IMG/VR virus record: IMGVR_UViG_3300025364_000003
Location: 62,001-126,000 of that record
DNA length: 64,000 nt
Direction: 5' to 3' (one strand)
Shown: one piece after another, positions 49,409-63,931 of the stretch
Layout of the letters: every line of letters begins with the position of its first letter
How positions within the stretch are numbered: position 1 is the first letter of the stretch
The notes under the pieces: generated by a model
Told to the model about the DNA's origin: nothing
Database searches by the model: none
What the model saw: only the letters and a program-made list of their open reading frames with translations
Program-made: the position numbers and the translations under genes

Positions 49409-50121
49409 TCCTCAAGTGCTTCGTCAAATTCACCATAACGAGCATTGTCTTGTGTTAGAGCCGAGACAACATCAGTTTTAGAAACTTCTTCACGATCGTC
49501 AGCATCGTCGCCATGTGGTGTTTCTGGAATATTGTTCGACGAGGCAATGTTCAATTTAGATTGGTAATCAACTTCGGCACTGTCAGTAGTTTGTACACCA
49601 TATCGTGTCTCTTGCTCGTTTTCAACTATCCCGCCAGCCGAACTTTCAATGTCATCACTTTCTAAAAATAAAGCTTTGAGACTATATTTTGATTGTTTCA
49701 TGTGTTCTTTCCTGGTACGCCAAGCAATTGGTCTGCCACCTCTCATAATAGGATATCGTTTTCCCTTACTATTCTGCGAAGGTTGCCCAGACAAATTTTT
49801 CATAAAGCTCATGAGATCCATGCTGCGCTCATCGTCGTCCCCATCAGTTAATTCACGCTCAATAGCTGGAATCGCTTTATCAAGGTCCGTATCAAACATT
49901 TTTTTCACACCAAGCTTATTTAACTTTTTCAAGATACCAAGCGTTTTTTTGCTAAGCTCATATTTCCCCTTCTTATGAAATTTTTTGAGCTGGTTATCAA
50001 TTATTTGTTTAATAATTGAAGAAAATTCTTCATCCAATATACCCTCTTCAAGAATAAGTTGGTCATTGATGCTTACAGATGCGAAAGTTTCTTTTAAGGA
50101 AGTTTTGGACATTATATACAC
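49405..50121 (-). CDS. Acidic hypothetical protein (possible internal head protein)
   Basis: 238-aa ORF with several LxE motifs; divergent from the portal unit. Confidence 0.7.
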   Translation of the reverse strand: MYIMSKTSLKETFASVSINDQLILEEGILDEEFSSIIKQIIDNQLKKFHKKGKYELSKKTLGILKKLNKLGVKKMFDTDLDKAIPAIERELTDGDDDERSMDLMSFMKNLSGQPSQNSKGKRYPIMRGGRPIAWRTRKEHMKQSKYSLKALFLESDDIESSAGGIVENEQETRYGVQTTDSAEVDYQSKLNIASSNNIPETPHGDDADDREEVSKTDVVSALTQDNARYGEFDEALED

Positions 50122-50163
50122 TCTGGATGTATTTCAAGCATAATTAGACGTTGATAGGTTAAT

Positions 50164-50985
50164 ATGGCACGCAACGAATCATTCTTTCAAAGACTAATCG
50201 AAAGTCATGCTCTTATTCCCCTGGTGCGCAAAGCTCACATGGGCAAGTCTGGGATTTATTTAATTCACAATGTAAGAACTGACCGGTTTTATGTTGGAAG
50301 TGCTACCAACCTCTATACTAGAAAAAATGTTCACCTGACTCAACTAAGAAAAAATAAGCATCACAATATCTTCCTTCAAAGAGATTTTAATAAGACTAAC
50401 GGTGAAATCAAATTTTTTGTATTACATTCAACAGAGAAATCATTACTGATTTCCAAGGAACAAGAAATTTTAGACAAGGTTTTTGGAAAGTCAGATTGTT
50501 ATAACCTAAATCCAATTGCCAATAGCTGGTTGGGTCGAAATCACAATGAAAAAACCAAAAATTTGTTGTCAGTTATAGCACTCAAAAGAAAAATTTCAAA
50601 TAAAACTCGTAAAAAAATGAGCGAATCTAAAAAGGGAATTCCGCTTCCTGAAAACCACTCAATCAGAAACGGCCACAGCGAAAAAACGAAAGAAAAAATC
50701 AGAAATTCGATGATTGGTCAGAAAAATCACTTTTTTGGCAAGACGCATTCAAAAAAAACAAAGAAAAAAATCAGTGAAAGTCTAAAGGGAAAATATTTTG
50801 GTCCCAAAAGCAAAATAAAGGCAACAAACATTATTTCTAGTGAAGTGTTATATTATGAAAGCATGGCCGAAGCTGCCAGAGATTTGAAATTAAACCAAGG
50901 GCATATTAGCAGTGTCTGCTCAGATAAATTTCAACAAACGGGGGGCTGGAAATTTGTAAAGGTGGAAAACAATGGCTCGGAATGA
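50164..50985 (+). CDS. Free-standing GIY-YIG homing endonuclease with NUMOD3-like repeats; begins with the portal's first 11 residues
   Basis: SGIYLI...FYVGSA..R, HHN..LQ.DF, HSEKTKEKI and HSKKTKKKIS repeats, C-terminal YESMAEAARDL HTH. Confidence 0.92.
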   Translation: MARNESFFQRLIESHALIPLVRKAHMGKSGIYLIHNVRTDRFYVGSATNLYTRKNVHLTQLRKNKHHNIFLQRDFNKTNGEIKFFVLHSTEKSLLISKEQEILDKVFGKSDCYNLNPIANSWLGRNHNEKTKNLLSVIALKRKISNKTRKKMSESKKGIPLPENHSIRNGHSEKTKEKIRNSMIGQKNHFFGKTHSKKTKKKISESLKGKYFGPKSKIKATNIISSEVLYYESMAEAARDLKLNQGHISSVCSDKFQQTGGWKFVKVENNGSE

Positions 50986-53900
50986 AAGTTTTTTCCAGCG
51001 TCTGACGAGGCTCTTTAGATCTGGCCCTGCAATTCAGCGTAGGATCAAAGGCCAGAATGTAGCTTCGTACTATGATACAAAGCTCATTCAGGGCAATTAT
51101 GGATATCGTGCCCCTGCACCATTCGGCTTTGGCCGAGAAAATTCTCCATTTTCCGTGCTTGGTTCATACGGAATGCTCGATCGTATGGCTCGTTATGCTG
51201 AGTTTGCTGAGATGGAGTATTGCCTTCATGGGGATACAAAAATTGCAGTTCCTGGTGGATACAAAACCATCAAAGAGTTAGCTGAGCAGCATGGCCTTGA
51301 TGGTGAGTTTATTGTTTACTCTTGGGACCACTCAAAAGAAAAAATCGTTCCAGCAGTTGGACGACAGGCACGGCAGACACGAACAGATCATGCGTTTAAA
51401 GTCACATTCGACTCAGGCAAAGAAATTATTGGAACAAGTAATCATCGCCTAATGAAGCGAGATGGTACCTATTGTGAAATTGGTGATCTGAAGCCTGGCG
51501 ATGCTATGATGCCATTCTACAGACGTTCTGTTGCCTCAGATAGAACTGAAGGTCAGGAAAACCTATACCAAACAATCTATACGGTCAACAGAGAAGAAAA
51601 TCCATATGGATGGACAGCTGAACATAAGTTGCTGGCCGAGTTTATTCTTGGTCGGTCATTGACTGAGGATGAGGTTGTTCATCATAAGAATTTCAAGGTA
51701 CACGATAATAGGATTGAGAATCTTGAAGTCATGAGCGCAGAGGATCATCGTCGTTTGCATGCTGAAATTCTCAATGGTAAAAAATGGGATTACAAAACCA
51801 ATTCTGAATGGATTGAAAACTTCAAGAGACAACATAGTACATGGATGAAAGCTAACAATCCTGCGGAGCGTAAAGACATCACGTTCGAACGTATCCTTTA
51901 CTGGTGTGACACAAACAGTTTCAACCTATACAAGGTTGCACGTGCATTTGACACAGACACCAATACCATCAAGCGAAAGTTGGCCTCAAAGGGTTTCACA
52001 TCCTGGATTGATTTTGCAACGGCATATTCTCCTGGCTGGAGAAGTGAAAGCTGGATCAACGCAGGAAAGCAGAACCCGAGATACCGATCCGATGTGTCTT
52101 TTGGTAAGATTTGTGACGTGTACAAGCAAGGTATGACCAAAAAGGCGATTGCAGAAGCGCTTGGAGTTTCCGTAGTGCCAATTCAAAATCGCTTGAAGGA
52201 GGCAGGTTACCAAACTTGGACTGAATTTGTGTCAAGTTATGAAAACCACAAGGTGGTTTCGGTTGAATACTACGGAGAAATTCCCTTATATGACCTTACG
52301 GTTGATGGGTATAAGAATTTCGCAACTGACAGTGTCATCTCACACAACACTCCTGAGATTGCAACAGCATTGGACATTTATGCTGACGAATCTGTGGGAG
52401 GCGATGAACACGGACATTCTTTCCATGTGTTTTCAGACAACGTTCAGATCAAACGAGCTTTAGAAGAGCTTTTCTATGATGTTCTGAACGTAGAATTCAA
52501 CATCCGAGTTTGGGCAAGGAATCTTGTCAAATATGGAGATTTTTTCCTTTATAATGAAGTTCTGCCAGACATTGGCGTGATCAATGCACAGCCGATTCCA
52601 GTAAACGATATTGAACGTGAAGAAGGTTTCGACGAAGAGGACCCATATGCAATTCGCTTCAAGTGGCTTACTAGAGGAAACGTTTATTTGGAAAACTGGC
52701 AGGTTACACACTTCAGAATCTTGGGCAATGACTTGTTCTTGCCTTATGGTACCGCCGTTTTAGAACCAGCACGAAGAATATGGCGTCAGCTCATCATGAT
52801 GGAAGATGCCATGTTGGTCTATCGAGTTGTCCGTTCACCTGAGCGTCGAGTTTTCTACATTGATGTTGGGAATGTAGCGCCAAACGATGTTCCTTCTTAC
52901 ATGGAAGCAGCAAAACAAACGCTACGTTCTCATTCTGTCATTGATAGAACATCAGGTCGTCAGGACTTGCGTTATAACCCACTTGCAATCGACGAGGATT
53001 ATTATATCCCCGTTCGAGGCAACCAGTCAGGTACTAAAATTGAAACATTGGCAGGTGGCCAGCATGTTACTGCTACGGAAGACGTTCAATATATTCAAAG
53101 CAAACTATTCGCAGCACTCAAAGTTCCCAAACCTTACTTGAACTATGATGAAAACCTTTCCTCTAAGGCGACACTTGCACAGACTGATGTACGATTTAGC
53201 CGTACCATTTCTGCAATTCAGAAGATTATTATTGCAGAAATGTCAAAACTTGCAATGATTCACCTTTATGCCAAGGGGTTTGATGGAGAAGATTTAATCA
53301 ACTTTGAATTGAAGCTCAGTAATCCTTCTACAGTGGCACTCCAGCAGAAACTGGAACTTTGGGCAACTAAGATGGACGTTGCAGGAACAGCTAAAGAAAC
53401 TAAACTGGTTGATGAGCGTTGGATTCAGAAGGTATTGCTTGAACTAACGGACGACGACATTAATAAAATCAATAAAGGACTTTACGAGGATAAGATTCGT
53501 GAAGTGCAACTTGACCAAGTTGCATTTGAAGAAGAGGTCTTTAAACCAACCACAACGGATGAATTCTCACCAGCTGGTTATGGCATTCCAGGAGAGAATA
53601 TTCCGAAGGGAGAAGTGCCATCCCCGCCACCTAGAGGCGGAAGTGAAATTGTCGGTCCGCCACCAAAGAAGAATCCATATAAGCTTGATTACAAACAAGG
53701 AACAACTCCGATTAAAGCTACGCCATTCTTGACGAGAAATCGAAAAAATAGAAAGAGAAGGGTTGGTGCTGGTGGGAGATCCAATACTGCAAACCCGGAC
53801 TTTGGCGCAATGCTTCATCCAGGTAAGAACAGATCCCTAAGTGACATTTATGGTCGTCAATCTCGCATGGAGGGAATTGAAATTGATGGTGAGGAATTCG

Positions 53901-54199
53901 TATTTGGTGAAAGCAACGACTTTAAGCCAGAACCAGTTTTACCTGGCGAACTTAAGAGTATCTTTAGAAGGATGACAGAACATTTTCAAAAAAACCAACA
54001 AAAGAGGACAAAAATTATTACTGAAGAACTTGAAACTGATATCATCGAAGAAACCGACGAAGACCAAAAACTTATTGAAGAAGTGTTATCAAATGGTGAG
54101 GATATGGAAATTAAGTCATCCTCATTAAAGGAAACATTTAGCCTAGAATCAGATGAAGAAGTTGACATAGAAGATATTATTGAAATCGACTTAGAATAA
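50972..54199 (+). CDS. Portal protein (T4 gp20-like) containing an intein
   Basis: PEIATALDIYADES, R.LVKYGD.F, FLPYGT.VLEPAR..WRQL..MEDAM.VYR..R.PERRVFYIDVGN, DEDYYIP, I.TL.GG, KLF.ALKVP motifs. Confidence 0.93.
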   Translation: MARNESFFQRLTRLFRSGPAIQRRIKGQNVASYYDTKLIQGNYGYRAPAPFGFGRENSPFSVLGSYGMLDRMARYAEFAEMEYCLHGDTKIAVPGGYKTIKELAEQHGLDGEFIVYSWDHSKEKIVPAVGRQARQTRTDHAFKVTFDSGKEIIGTSNHRLMKRDGTYCEIGDLKPGDAMMPFYRRSVASDRTEGQENLYQTIYTVNREENPYGWTAEHKLLAEFILGRSLTEDEVVHHKNFKVHDNRIENLEVMSAEDHRRLHAEILNGKKWDYKTNSEWIENFKRQHSTWMKANNPAERKDITFERILYWCDTNSFNLYKVARAFDTDTNTIKRKLASKGFTSWIDFATAYSPGWRSESWINAGKQNPRYRSDVSFGKICDVYKQGMTKKAIAEALGVSVVPIQNRLKEAGYQTWTEFVSSYENHKVVSVEYYGEIPLYDLTVDGYKNFATDSVISHNTPEIATALDIYADESVGGDEHGHSFHVFSDNVQIKRALEELFYDVLNVEFNIRVWARNLVKYGDFFLYNEVLPDIGVINAQPIPVNDIEREEGFDEEDPYAIRFKWLTRGNVYLENWQVTHFRILGNDLFLPYGTAVLEPARRIWRQLIMMEDAMLVYRVVRSPERRVFYIDVGNVAPNDVPSYMEAAKQTLRSHSVIDRTSGRQDLRYNPLAIDEDYYIPVRGNQSGTKIETLAGGQHVTATEDVQYIQSKLFAALKVPKPYLNYDENLSSKATLAQTDVRFSRTISAIQKIIIAEMSKLAMIHLYAKGFDGEDLINFELKLSNPSTVALQQKLELWATKMDVAGTAKETKLVDERWIQKVLLELTDDDINKINKGLYEDKIREVQLDQVAFEEEVFKPTTTDEFSPAGYGIPGENIPKGEVPSPPPRGGSEIVGPPPKKNPYKLDYKQGTTPIKATPFLTRNRKNRKRRVGAGGRSNTANPDFGAMLHPGKNRSLSDIYGRQSRMEGIEIDGEEFVFGESNDFKPEPVLPGELKSIFRRMTEHFQKNQQKRTKIITEELETDIIEETDEDQKLIEEVLSNGEDMEIKSSSLKETFSLESDEEVDIEDIIEIDLE
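51221..52348 (+). mobile_element. Intein (376 aa) with HNH endonuclease and two HTH repeats
   Basis: Starts CLHGDT, block B T..H, EHKL...VVHHKN..HDNRIENL HNH, ends YDLTV..YKNFA...SHN followed by Thr+1. Confidence 0.93.
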
Positions 54200-55182: not shown

Positions 55183-55803
55183 ATGAAATTACTACAAGAG
55201 TTAACAGTTTTTGATTATGACCAAAGTCAGGTCAAAGAATCTATTGAGAAAAACAATGGTAAAATTATTGTGCGTGGAGTAATACAACGTGCAGACACAT
55301 TGAATGCAAACGGCAGAGTTTATCCAAGGCATGTTCTTGAGCGTGAAATCAGAAACTATTTGAAGCTCGTAGATGAACGCAGGGCCACTGGAGAACTTGA
55401 TCATGCTGATGACCCGGTTGTAAATCTTAAGAACGTCAGTCACGTTATAACAAAACTTTGGATGGAACATGACGGTACTGTCATGGGTGAAGTTGAAGTT
55501 TTGGATCAATTGCCAATGGGCAAGATTCTTCGAGGTTTGATTGAAGCTGGAATCAAGGTTGGCATCTCAAGTAGAGCACTTGGTTCTGTAGAACACAATG
55601 GCGAAGGCGACGTTGTTCAAGATGATCTTCATTTTATTTGTTGGGATTTCGTTTCCGAACCTTCTACGCCTGGAGCCTGGATGATGAGAGAGGGAAAGGA
55701 ATATGGACCTGACATTCTCGAAAAAGTATTTTCTCGTGAAGATCGTATCTGGAGAGCTGCGAACGACATCCTTTCAGTTCACAAAAGTCTTAAAAGTTTT
55801 TAA
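55183..55803 (+). CDS. Prohead protease (T4 gp21-like)
   Basis: IQRAD..NANGRVYP, GELDH, VSH, GISSR..GS, WDFVSEPSTPGA. Confidence 0.93.
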   Translation: MKLLQELTVFDYDQSQVKESIEKNNGKIIVRGVIQRADTLNANGRVYPRHVLEREIRNYLKLVDERRATGELDHADDPVVNLKNVSHVITKLWMEHDGTVMGEVEVLDQLPMGKILRGLIEAGIKVGISSRALGSVEHNGEGDVVQDDLHFICWDFVSEPSTPGAWMMREGKEYGPDILEKVFSREDRIWRAANDILSVHKSLKSF

Positions 55804-60120: not shown

Positions 60121-61788
60121 ATGAGTCATCCAAACCAACCAATTGCTCCACAAGAACCAAACACTCAAAGAGTGGTGTTTAGGGAAACAGCACATTCAGA
60201 ATTGTTGAAAGGTGCTGATATCCTTGCGCAGGCCGTAGCAAGCACAATGGGTCCAAGTGGTCATAGTGTCATTATCGACAATGACCTTGGCGCACCTTCT
60301 ATCACCAAAGATGGTGTTACTGTAGCAAGATCAATTAATTTAAAAGACAGACTTCAATCTATGGGAGCAGAGCTTCTCAAAGAAGTCGCTTCTAAAACAA
60401 ATGACCAAGCCGGTGATGGCACCACAACTGCGACGGTTATTGGACACGCTTTACTAAAAGAGGGAATCAAACAAATTTCAACTGGTAGAAGCCCAATTCA
60501 TGTTAAGAAAGGCATGGAAATGGCTACCGAATATATCATTGATTTTCTCAAGGAAAATCGTATTCCTGTAGGTTCTAGAAGTGACATTGTAAACGTTGGA
60601 ACCATATCTGCCAATGGTGATCGAGAGATCGGTGAACTTCTTGCTTCGGCGATTGAAAAGGTTGGTAAAGATGGAATTATAACAATTGAGCCAGCTAAAT
60701 CGGTTCAGACTACTTTAGATGTTGTCGAAGGTATGCAACTTGAAAAGGGTTACATATCTCCATTTTTTGTTACCAATTCTGAGAAATCTACTTGCGAATT
60801 AGAAGATCCATATGTTCTTACAACGAGCAACAAAATTTCGTCTATCGGCGATATTATGAATGTTCTTGAAAAGGTTGCAAGAGCCGAAAAACCTTTGCTC
60901 ATTGTTGCTGATGAAGTGGAGGGTGATGCGCTTCACACCCTTATTGTTAACAAAATGAAGGGTGTTATCAAAGTTTGTGCCGTGAAGGCTCCGAGTTATG
61001 GAGAACACAGGGCAGATATTCTTAGCGACCTATCAACCGTTGTGGGTGGTGAAGTTTTTGGAGCTACAAGTAGCGTAGCACTTAAAAGTGCAGACCTGAG
61101 CCACCTTGGCAGAGCCAAGAAAGTTGTAGTATCCAGAAACTCATGTGTTATTGTTGGCGATGCCGGCAACACTGAACGTAGGACAGCTATTCAAGAAAGA
61201 ATTGAGTCTCTAAGAACCGCATTAGAAACTGATTCCACATTAGACGATTTAAGAATTAATCGTTATCGTGAGAGACTTGCCAAACTGTCTGGTGGTATTG
61301 CTATCATCAAAGTTGGCGGTTCCACTGAAGTTGAAATTCAAGAGAAGAAAGATAGAGTAGAAGATGCTGTAAATGCAACTATGGCTGCCACGCAGGAAGG
61401 AATTGTTCCGGGTGGCGGGGTTGCACTTTTTTATGCGTCACAAGCTCTTAGAGCCCAACTTAGAGCTGGAAAATGGAATGAATATCACGATGATACAATT
61501 AACGGTGTAAAGATCATTGCAGATGTTTGCGAATCACCTCTAAGAACAATTGTTAGGAACACGGGAGTCTCTGAAGACGTTGTTGCAAACCAACTTCTCG
61601 AAAAAATGAGATTAAATCCAGACTTCCGAATCGGGTATAATGCTGCCTCCAAAAATTACACAGATTTGATTCAAGAAGGTATTATTGATCCTGTGAAGGT
61701 TACTCGTTACGCATTAGAACATGCGACGTCGGTTGTTGGGCTCATGCTCACTTGTAATTGTGTAATTGTAAACGAAGAAAGTGATTAA
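60121..61788 (+). CDS. groEL: Group I chaperonin GroEL-like
   Basis: [61 protein letters not shown]; no GGM tail. Confidence 0.96.
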
Positions 61789-63085: not shown

Positions 63086-63931
63086 ATGAAGAAGACATAT
63101 GGTGGAAATGCTAATAAAAGTGGGATCTATAAAATCATCAACCATTCTAATGGACGATTTTACATTGGTTCCTGTAAGCGCTTTAAGCAAAGAGCATCCG
63201 AACATCACGGAGATTTAAGAACCAATCGACACTCGAATAAATTTTTGCAAAATGATTGGAATAAATGCGGGCCCGATTGTTTTGAATTTTTAGTGTTTGA
63301 GACTATAGAGAAACCAGAAGAAGAACGTCGTTTGCGAGAACAAGCGCTGTTGGACGAATTTTACGATGATCAAGTTCTTTGTTATAATATTGCAAAAACA
63401 ACTGTGGCAATTCCTCGACGAGTTTTTTCAAACGACCCTGATATCACCAAAAAGGTTCTTTCCCAAAAATCTAAGGCAATGTGGGCCGATTCTGAGTTTA
63501 GGGCTAAGATGAAAAAAATATATTCTGACCCTGGATTCCGCAAGAAGCAGTCTGAAAATCAGAAAAAAGTTTCACAAGACCCAAGCAATGGAAATTCGGC
63601 CGAAACTCTTCGAAAAAACATGTCGAATCCAGAAACGAAAGCGAAGTTATCTAAGAAGTTGAAAGAAGCTTGGGCTAGTGATGATGGAAGTCGTCGCAAA
63701 AAGGCTTCTAAAATTGCCAAGAAAGTGTATGAAGCAAACAAAGAAAAAATTACTAAAGCTAGGGTGAAAGCTAGAGCAAAATATTACGGCAAGGTTGTTT
63801 CTCCAGAAGGTGAAGTGTTTGAAATATACAACGCCAAGTCTTTTATAAGAGAGCAGGGTTTTTCGCAGACGTTTTATGACTTTTTAAATGGAAGGTACGA
63901 AGCCTATAAGGGTTGGAAGCGAGTGGAATAG
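63086..63931 (+). CDS. GIY-YIG homing endonuclease
   Basis: SGIYKI.N..NGRFYIGS..R, H.N.FLQNDW, basic helical repeats, YKGWK end. Confidence 0.92.
   Translation: MKKTYGGNANKSGIYKIINHSNGRFYIGSCKRFKQRASEHHGDLRTNRHSNKFLQNDWNKCGPDCFEFLVFETIEKPEEERRLREQALLDEFYDDQVLCYNIAKTTVAIPRRVFSNDPDITKKVLSQKSKAMWADSEFRAKMKKIYSDPGFRKKQSENQKKVSQDPSNGNSAETLRKNMSNPETKAKLSKKLKEAWASDDGSRRKKASKIAKKVYEANKEKITKARVKARAKYYGKVVSPEGEVFEIYNAKSFIREQGFSQTFYDFLNGRYEAYKGWKRVE

What the first reader, a model, noticed from the sequence alone, without database searches (positions are those of the whole stretch)
50164..51004. Homing endonuclease took over the portal's start: the same 11 residues twice, with 9 of 10 non-Met codons different
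Seen: the GIY-YIG gene begins ATG GCA CGC AAC GAA TCA TTC TTT CAA AGA CTA and the overlapping portal begins ATG GCT CGG AAT GAA AGT TTT TTC CAG CGT CTG. Both encode MARNESFFQRL, yet the DNA differs at almost every synonymous site. Inference: the endonuclease inserted into the 5' end of the portal gene, captured its late promoter, RBS and first codons, and regenerated a recoded portal start. Recoding would destroy the cleavage site and block deletion by recombination. Known analogy: fungal mitochondrial GIY-YIG genes that carry a duplicated piece of atp genes (usually the 3' end).
Basis: partly seen in the sequence, partly recalled or inferred. Interest (0 to 1): 0.8.

Follow-up and report, generated by a model that had tools for sequence, protein, structure and literature searches.

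The report
Homing nuclease hijacks portal gene start
A selfish DNA-cutting gene sits after the 11th codon of a phage's portal gene, uses that gene's own start signals for itself, and carries a differently spelled spare copy of those 11 codons so the portal protein is still made intact; this layout is known from fungal mitochondria and I found no report of it in phages.

Summary
The GIY-YIG ORF (50164-50985) and the T4-type portal ORF (50972-54199) both begin MARNESFFQRL. Nine of the 10 non-Met codons differ, as do 12 of 33 bases.

Endonuclease-free relatives (L073, L076, L052, L053) have an uninterrupted portal. Their upstream region and first 11 codons match copy 1 (26-32 of 33 nt; 30-32 for L073, L076 and L052), not copy 2 (21-24 of 33). 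So an 808-bp cassette (50197-51004) lies between portal codons 11 and 12. It holds a linker, an I-TevI-like nuclease, a Shine-Dalgarno site, an ATG and a synonymous copy of codons 1-11. The nuclease is read from the portal's native start. The portal restarts from the cassette-borne start.

At least four further diverged lineages share this layout, with nuclease identity down to 45-48%. Five of the eight members have no internal Met, so the captured start is their only start.

The diverged tract is concentrated in the duplicated 33 nt (Fisher p=0.002). Cassette presence is polyphyletic on the portal tree (AU p=0.007-0.015).

Whether the recoding is adaptive is untested. It only marginally exceeds random synonymous choice (p=0.036), and lineage L069 keeps 24 identical bases.

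Verdict: a new variant of a known kind, mirroring fungal mitochondrial endonuclease ORFs that carry duplicated gene ends.

The parts
50115..50149 (+). Conserved promoter-like blocks of the native portal upstream region (TATACA, 18 nt, CATAAT, extended to CATAATTAGAC). They now drive the endonuclease ORF.
   Evidence: There is a sigma-70-like match at 50115-50144. The blocks are invariant or nearly so in 11 aligned loci, both with and without the endonuclease (alignment A1). Timing ('late') is not shown.
50156..50159 (+). Native portal Shine-Dalgarno-like AGGT, 4 nt upstream of the ATG, now serving the endonuclease.
   Evidence: Read from the sequence. The equivalent GGT/AGG is seen in endonuclease-free relatives.
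50164..50196 (+). Copy 1: the native portal ATG plus codons 2-11, now the first 11 codons of the endonuclease.
   Evidence: It matches L076 at 32/33 nt and L073 and L052 at 30/33 nt, all endonuclease-free portals. It has no fixed difference from native alleles.
50197..50238 (+). Linker, codons 12-25 (IESHALIPLVRKAH), joining the captured start to the GIY-YIG core. This is the left end of the cassette.
   Evidence: Homology to endonuclease-free alleles breaks after codon 11. Ordinary relatives and I-TevI start directly at M-K-S-G-I-Y, which corresponds to residues 27-32 here.
50164..50985 (+). I-TevI-like GIY-YIG homing endonuclease ORF of 273 aa. The catalytic domain is about residues 28-115; NUMOD3 and the helix-turn-helix DNA-binding region are about residues 140-265.
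   Evidence: Pfam. PDB I-TevI 1MK0 and 1I3J. Foldseek TM 0.83-0.86 to the I-TevI catalytic domain. pN/pS about 0.17, dN/dS about 0.11, against L067/L074.
50197..51004 (+). Inferred mobile cassette of 808 bp: linker, nuclease, Shine-Dalgarno site, ATG and the spare codons 1-11.
   Evidence: It is absent as a unit from L073, L076, L052 and L053. The endonuclease-linked haplotype is concentrated in portal nt 1-33.
50959..50965 (+). Cassette-borne Shine-Dalgarno site AAGGTGG for the portal, 6 nt upstream of its ATG, encoded by the nuclease's C-terminal K-V-E codons.
   Evidence: Read from the sequence. It is conserved in L067, L068, L069 and L074, and a GAAGGA occupies the same place in L070.
50972..51004 (+). 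Copy 2: the cassette-borne, synonymously different portal start (ATG plus codons 2-11), joined in frame to native codon 12. The nuclease stop codon (50983-50985) lies inside it.
   Evidence: It is 88-91% identical among endonuclease-carrying alleles but only 64-67% identical to the closest endonuclease-free alleles L073 and L076 (up to 73% for L053). From codon 12 onward the window is 84% identical to both groups. Fixed differences lie at nt 6, 12, 16-18 and 21.
50972..54199 (+). T4-type portal (gp20) ORF of 1075 aa, including an intein.
   Evidence: Pfam Portal_T4, 1.5e-65. Many homologues.
51221..52348 (+). HNH-containing intein (residues C84-N459) inside the portal. This is a second, independent selfish element in the same gene.
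   Evidence: Pfam Intein_splicing and HNH_3. It is absent from L053, L055, L057, L073, L074 and L076, and present in L003, L067 and L068.

Best explanation
An I-TevI-like GIY-YIG homing endonuclease cassette (50197-51004) occupies a fixed site between codons 11 and 12 of a T4-type portal gene. The nuclease has no start signals of its own. Its ORF is fused in frame to the portal's native promoter-like region, ribosome-binding site, ATG and first 11 codons (copy 1), so it is expressed as a portal-tagged protein from the portal's signals. The displaced portal is rescued by the cassette's 3' end. That end carries a strong Shine-Dalgarno site embedded in the nuclease's last codons, an ATG, and its own version of codons 1-11 (copy 2), joined in frame to native codon 12. 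The portal protein is therefore unchanged, and its translation may be coupled to termination of the nuclease ORF 11 nt downstream of the portal ATG. Copy 2 travels with the cassette and has evolved apart from native portal starts, under purifying selection on the peptide only. That is why it is synonymously near-saturated against copy 1. The sequence difference probably also keeps the cassette-bearing genome from carrying an intact target site, and removes homology for precise deletion. Shown: the anatomy, which copy is native, the cassette boundaries, recurrence across a nuclease family, and presence/absence polymorphism. Inferred: the expression route, homing activity, the target site, and any selective value of the recoding.
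For: 1. Endonuclease-free relatives have an uninterrupted portal. Their upstream blocks and first 11 codons are collinear with the region upstream of the nuclease plus copy 1. Copy 1 matches L073, L076, L052 and L053 at 26-32 of 33 nt; copy 2 matches at 21-24 of 33.
2. Positions where no base is shared between carrying and free alleles number 6 in portal nt 1-33 and 6 in nt 34-249 (Fisher p=0.0018). Copy 1 has none. For codons 12-83 the window is 84% identical both to endonuclease-free L073 and to endonuclease-carrying L074.
3. Seven other nucleases of this clade (83% down to 45% identity) all begin with a portal-like leader. Five of the eight members have Arg or Asn instead of Met at position 26. 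Ordinary relatives start directly at M-x-x-G-I-Y. All relatives for which DNA was retrieved (L067/L074, L068, L069, L070-72, L087) have a portal with a second start immediately downstream.
4. In the distant L070 lineage, the region upstream of the nuclease is again collinear with the endonuclease-free L078 portal upstream region, and copy 1 keeps the native codons.
5. The nuclease looks functional. The GIY-YIG residues are conserved. The fold matches I-TevI with TM 0.83-0.86. The DNA-binding domain matches 1I3J. dN/dS is about 0.11.
6. Cassette presence is polyphyletic on the portal C-extein tree. The window pairs with endonuclease-free L073, and the AU test rejects monophyly of the carriers at p=0.015 and 0.007.
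7. No intron was found: there are no Rfam hits in 49800-51400.
8. Fungal mitochondrial mobile endonuclease ORFs show the mirror arrangement with similar numbers. In Glomus atp6 the two copies are 63.5% identical in nucleotides and 91% in amino acids (PMC3630166).
Against: There is no experimental or transcript evidence for which ATGs are used, for cleavage, or for homing. The contigs of five runs show only the endonuclease-carrying form. Synonymous divergence of the nuclease (pS 0.48) is not lower than that of the portal body (0.53-0.65), so recent horizontal spread is not demonstrated. The polyphyly could reflect losses, or recombination of the portal body, rather than gains. No donor allele with a copy-2-like start was found among endonuclease-free portals. 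L069 keeps nt 13-36 identical in both copies, and in L087 copy 2 looks native-like while copy 1 has decayed. The 'separate history' of copy 2 is therefore not uniform across lineages.
Confidence: 0.8

Rival explanations
1. Adaptive recoding. The 33 nt were duplicated in place when the nuclease inserted. Copy 2 was then driven away from copy 1 by selection, so that the nuclease does not cut its own genome and the repeats cannot recombine to delete it.
For: The two copies share fewer codons (1 of 10) than random synonymous choice predicts (expected 4.0, P=0.036). The longest identical run is 5 nt in the window, L074 and L068, and 3 nt in L070. Six endonuclease-linked fixed synonymous changes cluster in nt 6-21. 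For an I-TevI-like enzyme, the target spans about 38 bp around and upstream of the insertion site (PMC2988022). An unrecoded duplicate would therefore recreate a whole target at copy 2. In the window, copy 1 has CAACG (a CNNNG motif) 21-24 nt upstream of the junction, and copy 2 has GAATG there (motif rule from PMC2988022 and PMC3943268).
Against: The excess over saturation is marginal and post hoc. With empirical ortholog codon identity of 28-53%, 1 of 10 is unremarkable at the low end of that range. L069 tolerates a 24-nt perfect repeat, with differences only in codons 2-4. Native alleles L073, L076 and L053 have TAACG, not CNNNG, at that position, and a second CNNNG (the Gln-Arg codons) cannot be removed synonymously and survives in copy 2. 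Simple long separate evolution of a cassette-borne fragment, as in fungal mitochondrial elements, explains the same pattern.
Confidence: 0.35
2. The reverse anatomy. Copy 2 plus the portal is the untouched native gene, and the mobile unit is copy 1 plus the nuclease, inserted between the promoter and the portal ATG. The cassette brought a portal-like leader from an earlier host.
For: At the protein level the two descriptions are equivalent. All sampled endonuclease-carrying alleles have the copy-2 spelling and all endonuclease-free alleles have the copy-1 spelling. This would also be seen if the nuclease targeted only copy-2-type genomes.
Against: Similarity to endonuclease-free relatives runs without a break from the upstream blocks through copy 1, at 91-97% against L073, L076 and L052. 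It then drops at copy 2 to 64-67% before recovering to 80-84% from codon 12 (Fisher p=0.028 for the window against L073). The window's nearest portal body belongs to endonuclease-free L073, whose start is copy-1-like.
Confidence: 0.07
3. The shared 11-residue peptide is functional in both proteins, for example as a tag that directs the nuclease to the assembling head or portal partner, or that subjects it to the same control as the portal. On this view it is conserved in the nuclease by selection.
For: The leader is 11/11 identical in the window, L067 and L074, while the rest of the nuclease has 17% amino-acid divergence. Every member of the clade retains a recognisable portal-like leader. The model gives residues 7-14 as a helix with moderate confidence.
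Against: Zero changes in 11 codons is expected 13% of the time at 17% divergence (0.83^11, my arithmetic). The leader drifts where time allows: 9/11 in L068, 11/12 in L069, about 7/13 in L070, and an indel in L087. Near-identity of copy 1 to native alleles at synonymous sites (32/33 nt) fits shared ancestry with native portal starts, or conservation of the initiation region, better than peptide-level selection.
Confidence: 0.05
4. Chance resemblance or an assembly chimera.
For: None beyond the general possibility in metagenome assemblies.
Against: The identical sequence occurs in contigs from five runs and in two IMG/VR contigs. The same architecture occurs in diverged relatives from unrelated samples. 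The peptide is the conserved N-terminus of the portal family.
Confidence: 0.01

Closest known systems
Mobile endonuclease ORFs (mORFs) of fungal mitochondria that carry a duplicate of a host gene end (Allomyces macrogynus atp6; Glomus atp6, atp9, cox2, nad3; PMC3630166)
   Same: A homing-type endonuclease ORF is inserted in phase inside a host gene. The element carries its own copy of the displaced gene end, which becomes the expressed one. The native copy still matches relatives while the element-borne copy is strongly diverged in nucleotides but conserved in protein. The Glomus atp6 copies are 63.5% identical in nucleotides; here the figure is 64%.
   Different: This is the mirror image: the 5' end rather than the 3' end. 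The displaced native piece is not left as a dead remnant but is reused as the nuclease's own translation start. The duplicated piece is only 33 nt. The host is a phage structural gene, not a mitochondrial respiratory gene. The fungal cases are mostly LAGLIDADG enzymes (GIY-YIG in atp9).
[quoted passage not shown]
   Same: Mobile insertions that bring a homologue of a portion of the host gene, proposed to lead to partial replacement of the host gene by a foreign fragment.
   Different: There the duplicated fragments are exon-sized and lie in or next to introns, and the endonuclease is not described as fused to the host start. Here no intron is present.
Free-standing Seg/Mob homing endonucleases of T4-related phages (PMC2988022)
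   Same: The host is a T4-type phage. The nuclease is a promoter-less cassette that exploits an upstream host promoter. Signals for the downstream essential gene are embedded in the nuclease coding region, which favours retention. Short overlaps suggest translational coupling. Presence is polymorphic among relatives.
   Different: T4 elements lie between genes or split genes into two polypeptides. That review describes none that fuses to the host gene's first codons and supplies a duplicate start (the word stem 'duplicat' occurs 0 times). Here even the ribosome-binding site and ATG are borrowed, and the host protein stays in one piece.
I-TevI (T4 td intron endonuclease)
   Same: It is the best structural and sequence match for both the catalytic domain (1MK0/1LN0) and the DNA-binding domain (1I3J). 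The modular GIY-YIG + linker + helix-turn-helix layout is the same.
   Different: I-TevI is intron-encoded with its own late promoter and ribosome-binding site, and has no N-terminal leader. This enzyme has a 25-26-residue leader, of which the first 11 residues are the portal's.
In-frame fusion of organellar intron ORFs to the upstream exon ('core creep', PMC8393795)
   Same: The endonuclease ORF gains the host gene's expression signals by being read in frame from the host start.
   Different: In that case splicing restores the host mRNA. Here there is no intron, and the host gene is restored by a second start.

Membership tests
GIY-YIG homing endonuclease, I-TevI-like | GIY-YIG catalytic domain with the conserved Tyr, Tyr, Arg, His, Glu and Asn residues | tested here: met
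   Pfam PF01541. The alignment to I-TevI 1MK0/1LN0 covers residues 28-115. Y32, R53, H66, E99 and N114 are invariant and Y43 and H57 nearly so across 16 relatives. Foldseek TM 0.83-0.86, rmsd 1.9 A. The catalytic roles of these residues are from my own knowledge of I-TevI.
GIY-YIG homing endonuclease, I-TevI-like | Modular C-terminal DNA-binding region (NUMOD3 repeats, helix-turn-helix) | tested here: met
   PF07460 and PF22083. Match to the I-TevI DNA-binding domain 1I3J over residues 167-256.
GIY-YIG homing endonuclease, I-TevI-like | Presence/absence polymorphism at one fixed site among otherwise collinear relatives | tested here: met
   The cassette is absent as a unit from L073, L076, L052, L053 and L078, and present in the window, L067/L074, L068, L069, L070 and L087. 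The pattern is discordant with the portal tree.
GIY-YIG homing endonuclease, I-TevI-like | Site-specific cleavage of the endonuclease-free allele and gene conversion into it | not testable with these tools
   This needs enzyme and homing assays. Purifying selection (dN/dS about 0.11) is consistent with an active enzyme. One relative (L068) shows relaxed constraint.
Free-standing (Seg-like) phage endonuclease | Not embedded in an intron or intein | tested here: met
   No Rfam family, group I introns included, matches 49800-51400. The ORF has no Hint domain. The portal has a separate ATG and Shine-Dalgarno site.
Free-standing (Seg-like) phage endonuclease | An ORF of its own, lying between host genes | tested here: not met
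   The ORF begins with the host gene's own ATG and 11 codons and lies inside the ancestral portal reading frame. Five of the eight family members have no Met at the core start.
Mobile endonuclease ORF with host-gene-end duplication (fungal mitochondrial type) | Endonuclease ORF in phase with the host gene, plus an element-borne duplicate of the displaced end that continues the functional gene | tested here: met
   Frame and junctions were read directly. Copy 2 is contiguous with portal codon 12.
Mobile endonuclease ORF with host-gene-end duplication (fungal mitochondrial type) | The native copy matches relatives and the element-borne copy is the divergent one | tested here: met
   Copy 1 matches natives at 26-32 of 33 nt and copy 2 at 21-24 of 33. 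The fixed differences lie only in copy 2.
Mobile endonuclease ORF with host-gene-end duplication (fungal mitochondrial type) | Mitochondrial host, with the 3' end of the gene duplicated | tested here: not met
   This is a phage head-gene module (portal, S77 prohead protease), and the 5' end is the one duplicated.

The most novel reading that the evidence does not exclude
The portal-derived leader is not just a borrowed start but a working tag. By wearing the portal's first 11 residues, and being translated from the portal's own initiation region with the portal's translation coupled behind it, the nuclease would be made at portal time and in portal amounts. It might also be drawn into the assembling head or onto portal partners, so that it could be delivered with the DNA and cut a competitor's portal gene early in a co-infection. 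The six cassette-linked synonymous changes in copy 2 would then be the immunity determinant of the carrier genome.
Probability: 0.06. Interest if true: 0.85.

Novelty: new variant of a known kind. Interest (0 to 1): 0.6.

Why it matters
Homing endonucleases normally avoid harming an essential host gene by sitting in an intron, in an intein, or between genes. This family uses a fourth route in a phage. It sits inside the coding start of an essential structural gene, takes that gene's start signals, and pays for it by carrying a spare start.

Three consequences follow:
- Annotators will see two genes with the same N-terminus, or may misplace the portal start.
- The family gives natural pairs of native and re-spelled target halves. 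This makes the recognition and self-immunity rules of an I-TevI-like enzyme directly testable. That is useful because I-TevI domains are used in engineered nucleases.
- The 'gene-end duplication' trick known from fungal mitochondria has a counterpart in viruses. The same portal gene also hosts an HNH intein, which makes it a hotspot for selfish elements.

Tried and rejected
- **GenBank phage collection.** The 8-kb region (megablast) and the 83-aa N-extein (tblastn) gave no match. Relatives had to come from metagenomes.
- **Endonuclease-free variants in the source population.** Contigs of five hypersaline-lake runs show only the carrying form. These contigs drop rare variants, so absence is not shown.
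- **'Late promoter' test.** The conserved CATAATTAGAC, or a T4-late-like YATAAWTA motif, is not enriched in the window (9 matches against 14.7 expected; 6 against 5.5). Only cross-relative conservation supports a promoter.
- **Nuclease younger than the portal.** This is not supported: pS is 0.48 for the nuclease against 0.53-0.65 for the portal.
- **Cleavage-motif reading.** CAACG in copy 1 against GAATG in copy 2, 21-24 nt upstream of the junction, matches I-TevI geometry. It is inconclusive, because most native alleles have TAACG there and a second CNNNG is fixed by the Gln-Arg codons.
- **Linker derived from portal codons 12-27.** Pro19 and Gly27 coincide, but only 12 of 48 bases match by my hand count on the sequences, which is chance level. 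Rejected for the window lineage.
- **Copy-2-like donor.** No donor was found among endonuclease-free alleles. The best matches are 23-25 of 33 nt.
Full report
**1. The observation**

The window holds a 273-aa ORF at 50164-50985 and a 1075-aa ORF at 50972-54199 on the + strand. Both begin MARNESFFQRL.
- Of the ten non-Met codons, only GAA is shared.
- 21 of 33 bases are identical, and the longest in-register identical run is 5 nt.
- The two ORFs overlap by 14 nt in different frames.

Pfam calls the first ORF GIY-YIG + NUMOD3 + an I-HmuI-type NUMOD-like domain. It calls the second a T4-type portal (gp20) interrupted by an intein that carries an HNH domain. The region has no Rfam match, so no group I intron is involved. 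The sequence is not an assembly accident. Contigs from five hypersaline-lake runs carry it unchanged, and two IMG/VR contigs hold it.

**2. How unusual the codon difference is**

Under the codon usage of this genome's own genes, two independent spellings of ARNESFFQRL would share 4.0 codons on average. The probability of sharing one or none is 0.036. Orthologous portals that have the same residue at a position share the codon only 28-53% of the time. The two copies are therefore about as different as synonymous saturation allows, and only marginally more. The striking part is a perfect peptide repeat combined with saturated silent sites. That combination needs a historical explanation but does not by itself prove directed recoding.

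**3. Which copy is native**

A metagenome scan and two protein searches recovered close relatives of the portal, both with and without the endonuclease.

Four endonuclease-free alleles of the same clade (L073, L076, L052, L053) have N-exteins 92-100% identical in protein. In each, the portal is uninterrupted and directly follows a divergently transcribed gene. The upstream region of these alleles aligns without a break to the region upstream of the window's nuclease gene, including invariant blocks TATACAC and (C/T)ATAATTAGA (alignment A1). Their first 11 codons match copy 1:

| Allele | Copy 1 match (nt of 33) |
|---|---|
| L076 | 32 |
| L073 | 30 |
| L052 | 30 |
| L053 | 26 |

Copy 2 matches the same four alleles at only 21-24 of 33. 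Homology to the native allele stops after codon 11 of the nuclease ORF and resumes at codon 12 of the portal.
- For portal codons 12-83, the window is 84% identical both to endonuclease-free L073 and to endonuclease-carrying L074.
- For codons 1-11, it is 88-91% identical to the carriers but only 64-67% to L073 and L076.
- Positions at which carriers and non-carriers share no base number six in nt 1-33 (nt 6, 12, 16-18, 21) and six in the following 216 nt (Fisher p=0.0018). Copy 1 has no such position.

The simplest reading is an 808-bp cassette, 50197-51004, inserted between portal codons 11 and 12. The cassette consists of a 14-codon linker, the nuclease core, a Shine-Dalgarno site AAGGTGG (50959-50965) spelled by the nuclease's last K-V-E codons, an ATG, and a second spelling of codons 2-11.

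**4. A family habit, not a one-off**

The nuclease has seven closer relatives, at 83, 70, 64, 60, 48, 48 and 45% identity. Every one starts with a portal-like peptide: MARNESFFQRL, MTRNESFFQRP, MARSDSFFNRL, MASPESFFQR, MTNKQKSFYQ, MANKEKSFYQRL or MTWQQKNF.

Ordinary relatives, and I-TevI itself, begin directly M-K-S-G-I-Y. This corresponds to residues 27-32 here. In five of the eight members, position 26 is Arg or Asn rather than Met, so the captured portal ATG is their only possible start.

All relatives for which DNA could be fetched (L067/L074, L068, L069, L070-72, L087) have a portal gene immediately downstream. That portal has its own ATG and a second copy of the peptide, preceded by a Shine-Dalgarno site inside or at the end of the nuclease ORF.

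In the distant L070 lineage, the region upstream of the nuclease is again collinear with the portal upstream region of an endonuclease-free relative (L078). Copy 1 there keeps the native codons AAA AGT TTC TAT, while copy 2 reads AAG TCT TTT TAC.

**5. The enzyme**

Both halves of the protein find I-TevI as their best solved relative. The catalytic domain matches 1MK0/1LN0 over residues 28-115, and the DNA-binding domain matches 1I3J over residues 167-256. An AlphaFold model (mean pLDDT 79, catalytic domain above 90) superposes on the I-TevI catalytic domain with TM 0.83-0.86 and rmsd 1.9 A. The GIY-YIG signature residues are invariant or nearly so across 16 relatives.

Between the window and L067/L074, the nuclease has pN 0.08 and pS 0.48, giving dN/dS of about 0.11. 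It is therefore kept by selection. The L068 copy shows relaxed constraint and altered motif residues, and looks to be decaying.

**6. Mobility**

On a tree of 780 nt of the portal C-extein, three pairings appear:
- the window pairs with endonuclease-free L073;
- L074 and L068 group apart, with endonuclease-free L076 nearby;
- L069 pairs with endonuclease-free L055.

Forcing the carriers together is rejected by the AU test (p=0.015 for three carriers, p=0.007 for four). The cassette has thus been gained or lost several times, or the portal body has recombined around it.

Gain and loss cannot be separated. The nuclease's synonymous divergence (0.48) is not lower than the portal's (0.53-0.65).

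One hint of recent spread comes from a microbial-mat run. It holds a 354-nt piece of the nuclease with one difference, and a 300-nt piece of the portal with eleven differences, the ten listed all at third codon positions (Fisher p=0.0018). Whether the two short contigs come from one genome is unknown.

**7. How it most likely works**

*Shown:* the anatomy above. *Inferred from it:*
- The nuclease is transcribed and translated from the portal's own signals as a protein with an 11-residue portal tag and a 14-residue linker.
- The portal is initiated at 50972 from the cassette-borne Shine-Dalgarno site.
- Because the nuclease stop (50983-50985) lies 11 nt downstream of that ATG, the portal's initiation may be coupled to nuclease termination. 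This kind of overlap is discussed for T4 endonucleases (PMC2988022).

*By analogy with I-TevI:* that enzyme binds about 20 bp centred on the insertion site and cuts 23-25 nt upstream at a CNNNG (PMC2988022, PMC3943268). On that model the native target would span roughly nt 8-46 of the portal ORF. In a carrier, copy 1 retains the upstream half only. Copy 2 plus the portal would form a complete site unless copy 2 is spelled differently.

This gives a mechanistic reason for the difference, but I could not test it, and the motif evidence is inconclusive. The window's copy 1 has CAACG where copy 2 has GAATG, 21-24 nt upstream of the junction. However, several native alleles read TAACG there.

**8. 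Why the copies differ**

Two accounts fit.
- **(a) Separate history.** Copy 2 belongs to the cassette and has evolved apart from native portal starts for as long as the family has existed (nuclease identities down to 45-48%). Selection has acted only on the peptide. This is what is seen for the gene ends carried by fungal mitochondrial endonuclease ORFs. In Glomus atp6 the native and inserted copies are 63.5% identical in DNA and 91% in protein, and the native copy matches relatives (PMC3630166).
- **(b) Selection for dissimilarity.** The difference would have been driven by self-immunity and resistance to deletion.

The marginal excess over saturation and the clustering of fixed changes in nt 6-21 lean towards some contribution from (b).

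Lineage L069 argues that heavy recoding is not required. Its two copies are identical over nt 13-36 and differ only in codons 2-4. It also suggests that part of copy 2 can be overwritten by local sequence.

I rank (a) as the backbone, with (b) as a likely but unproven addition.

**9. Rivals considered**

- **Reverse anatomy (copy 2 native, copy 1 plus nuclease mobile).** This is disfavoured. Similarity to endonuclease-free relatives runs unbroken from the upstream blocks through copy 1, and dips only at copy 2.
- **A functional shared peptide.** This is not excluded but is weakly supported. The leader drifts in L068, L070 and L087. No change in 11 codons is expected 13% of the time at the nuclease's divergence.
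- **Chance or artefact.** Both are excluded (section 1).

**10. Comparison with known systems and novelty**

The enzyme is a member of the I-TevI-like GIY-YIG homing endonucleases by every feature testable here. The genomic arrangement fits none of the phage categories cleanly:
- it is not intron- or intein-borne;
- it is not a stand-alone ORF between genes;
- it does not split the host protein.

It works like the fungal mitochondrial mobile endonuclease ORFs that carry a duplicate gene end, but mirrored to the 5' end. The twist is that the displaced native piece is reused as the nuclease's own start.

A review of T4-family mobile elements describes promoter-less cassettes, embedded host promoters and overlaps, but no duplication of host codons. 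My literature searches found no phage example. The library is limited to open-access text, so this is absence of evidence only.

I rate it a new variant of a known kind, with interest 0.6.

Noticed in passing
window 51221-52348: The portal carries an intein with an HNH endonuclease domain (C84 to N459), inserted just before the conserved TPEIATALDIYADE motif. It is present in L003, L067 and L068 and absent from L053, L055, L057, L073, L074 and L076. L067 and L074 are 99% identical in the nuclease region yet differ in having the intein.
   Followed up: partly
L069:2631-3917 (equivalent to window ~53161); L054:3233-4618: Relatives carry further insertions in the portal at other places. L069 has a ~1.3-kb insert at a second site, and L054 has a larger insert at or near the Cys84 site. 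Portal homologues in the protein search reach 1460-1856 aa with several Hint/intein Pfam hits, so this portal family is a hotspot for selfish elements.
   Followed up: no
window 63086-63931: There is a second GIY-YIG endonuclease gene (281 aa) of the ordinary free-standing kind. It has its own AAGGAG ribosome-binding site and a short N-terminus (MKKTYGGNANKSGIY), with no captured leader. L074 and L075 have a GIY-YIG gene at a similar distance downstream of the portal.
   Followed up: partly
window 60121-61788: A phage-encoded Cpn60/GroEL-type chaperonin (PF00118, 3.4e-67) lies in the head-gene neighbourhood. That neighbourhood also holds a T4 gp21-type S77 prohead protease at 55183-55803.
   Followed up: no
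window 50547-50900 and 52775-53074 (run X6, microbial mat metagenome): A different environment holds a nuclease fragment with 1 difference in 354 nt and a portal fragment with 11 differences in 300 nt, the ten listed all at third codon positions (Fisher p=0.0018). If both come from one phage, the nuclease is more recently shared than the portal body.
   Followed up: partly
L068:179-1003: The nuclease copy in L068 looks degenerate. It is 70% identical, pN/pS is about 0.3, YVGS is changed to HVES, SGIY to FGIY, and its leader is changed to MTRNESFFQRP. The downstream portal start remains intact.
   Followed up: partly
window 50172-50176 vs 50980-50984: Copy 1 reads CAACG (a CNNNG motif, the I-TevI cleavage-site preference) 21-24 nt upstream of the cassette junction. 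Copy 2 reads GAATG at the same place, as do L067, L068, L069 and L074. Several native alleles read TAACG there, so the meaning is unclear.
   Followed up: partly
window 50950-50971; L067, L068, L069, L070, L074 equivalents: The nuclease's conserved C-terminal W-K/S-F-x-K-V-E codons double as the portal's Shine-Dalgarno site. In every lineage the nuclease stop lies within a few bases of the portal ATG (14-nt overlap, 8-nt overlap, or a 4-nt gap). This suggests conserved translational coupling.
   Followed up: no
P0007 (no DNA retrievable); window residues 19 and 27 of both ORFs: The leader of P0007 (MANKEKSFYQRLTEQFPS) resembles the portal N-terminus out to about residue 17, so the captured segment may be longer in that lineage. 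In the window, Pro19 and Gly27 coincide in the nuclease and the portal, but the DNA there is at chance identity.
   Followed up: partly
IMGVR_UViG_3300005974_000004 (461 kb) and IMGVR_UViG_3300025364_000003 (207 kb): The same locus sits on contigs of very different length, from hypersaline-lake metagenomes. The true genome size (jumbo phage, or a concatenated or mis-joined assembly) was not examined.
   Followed up: no
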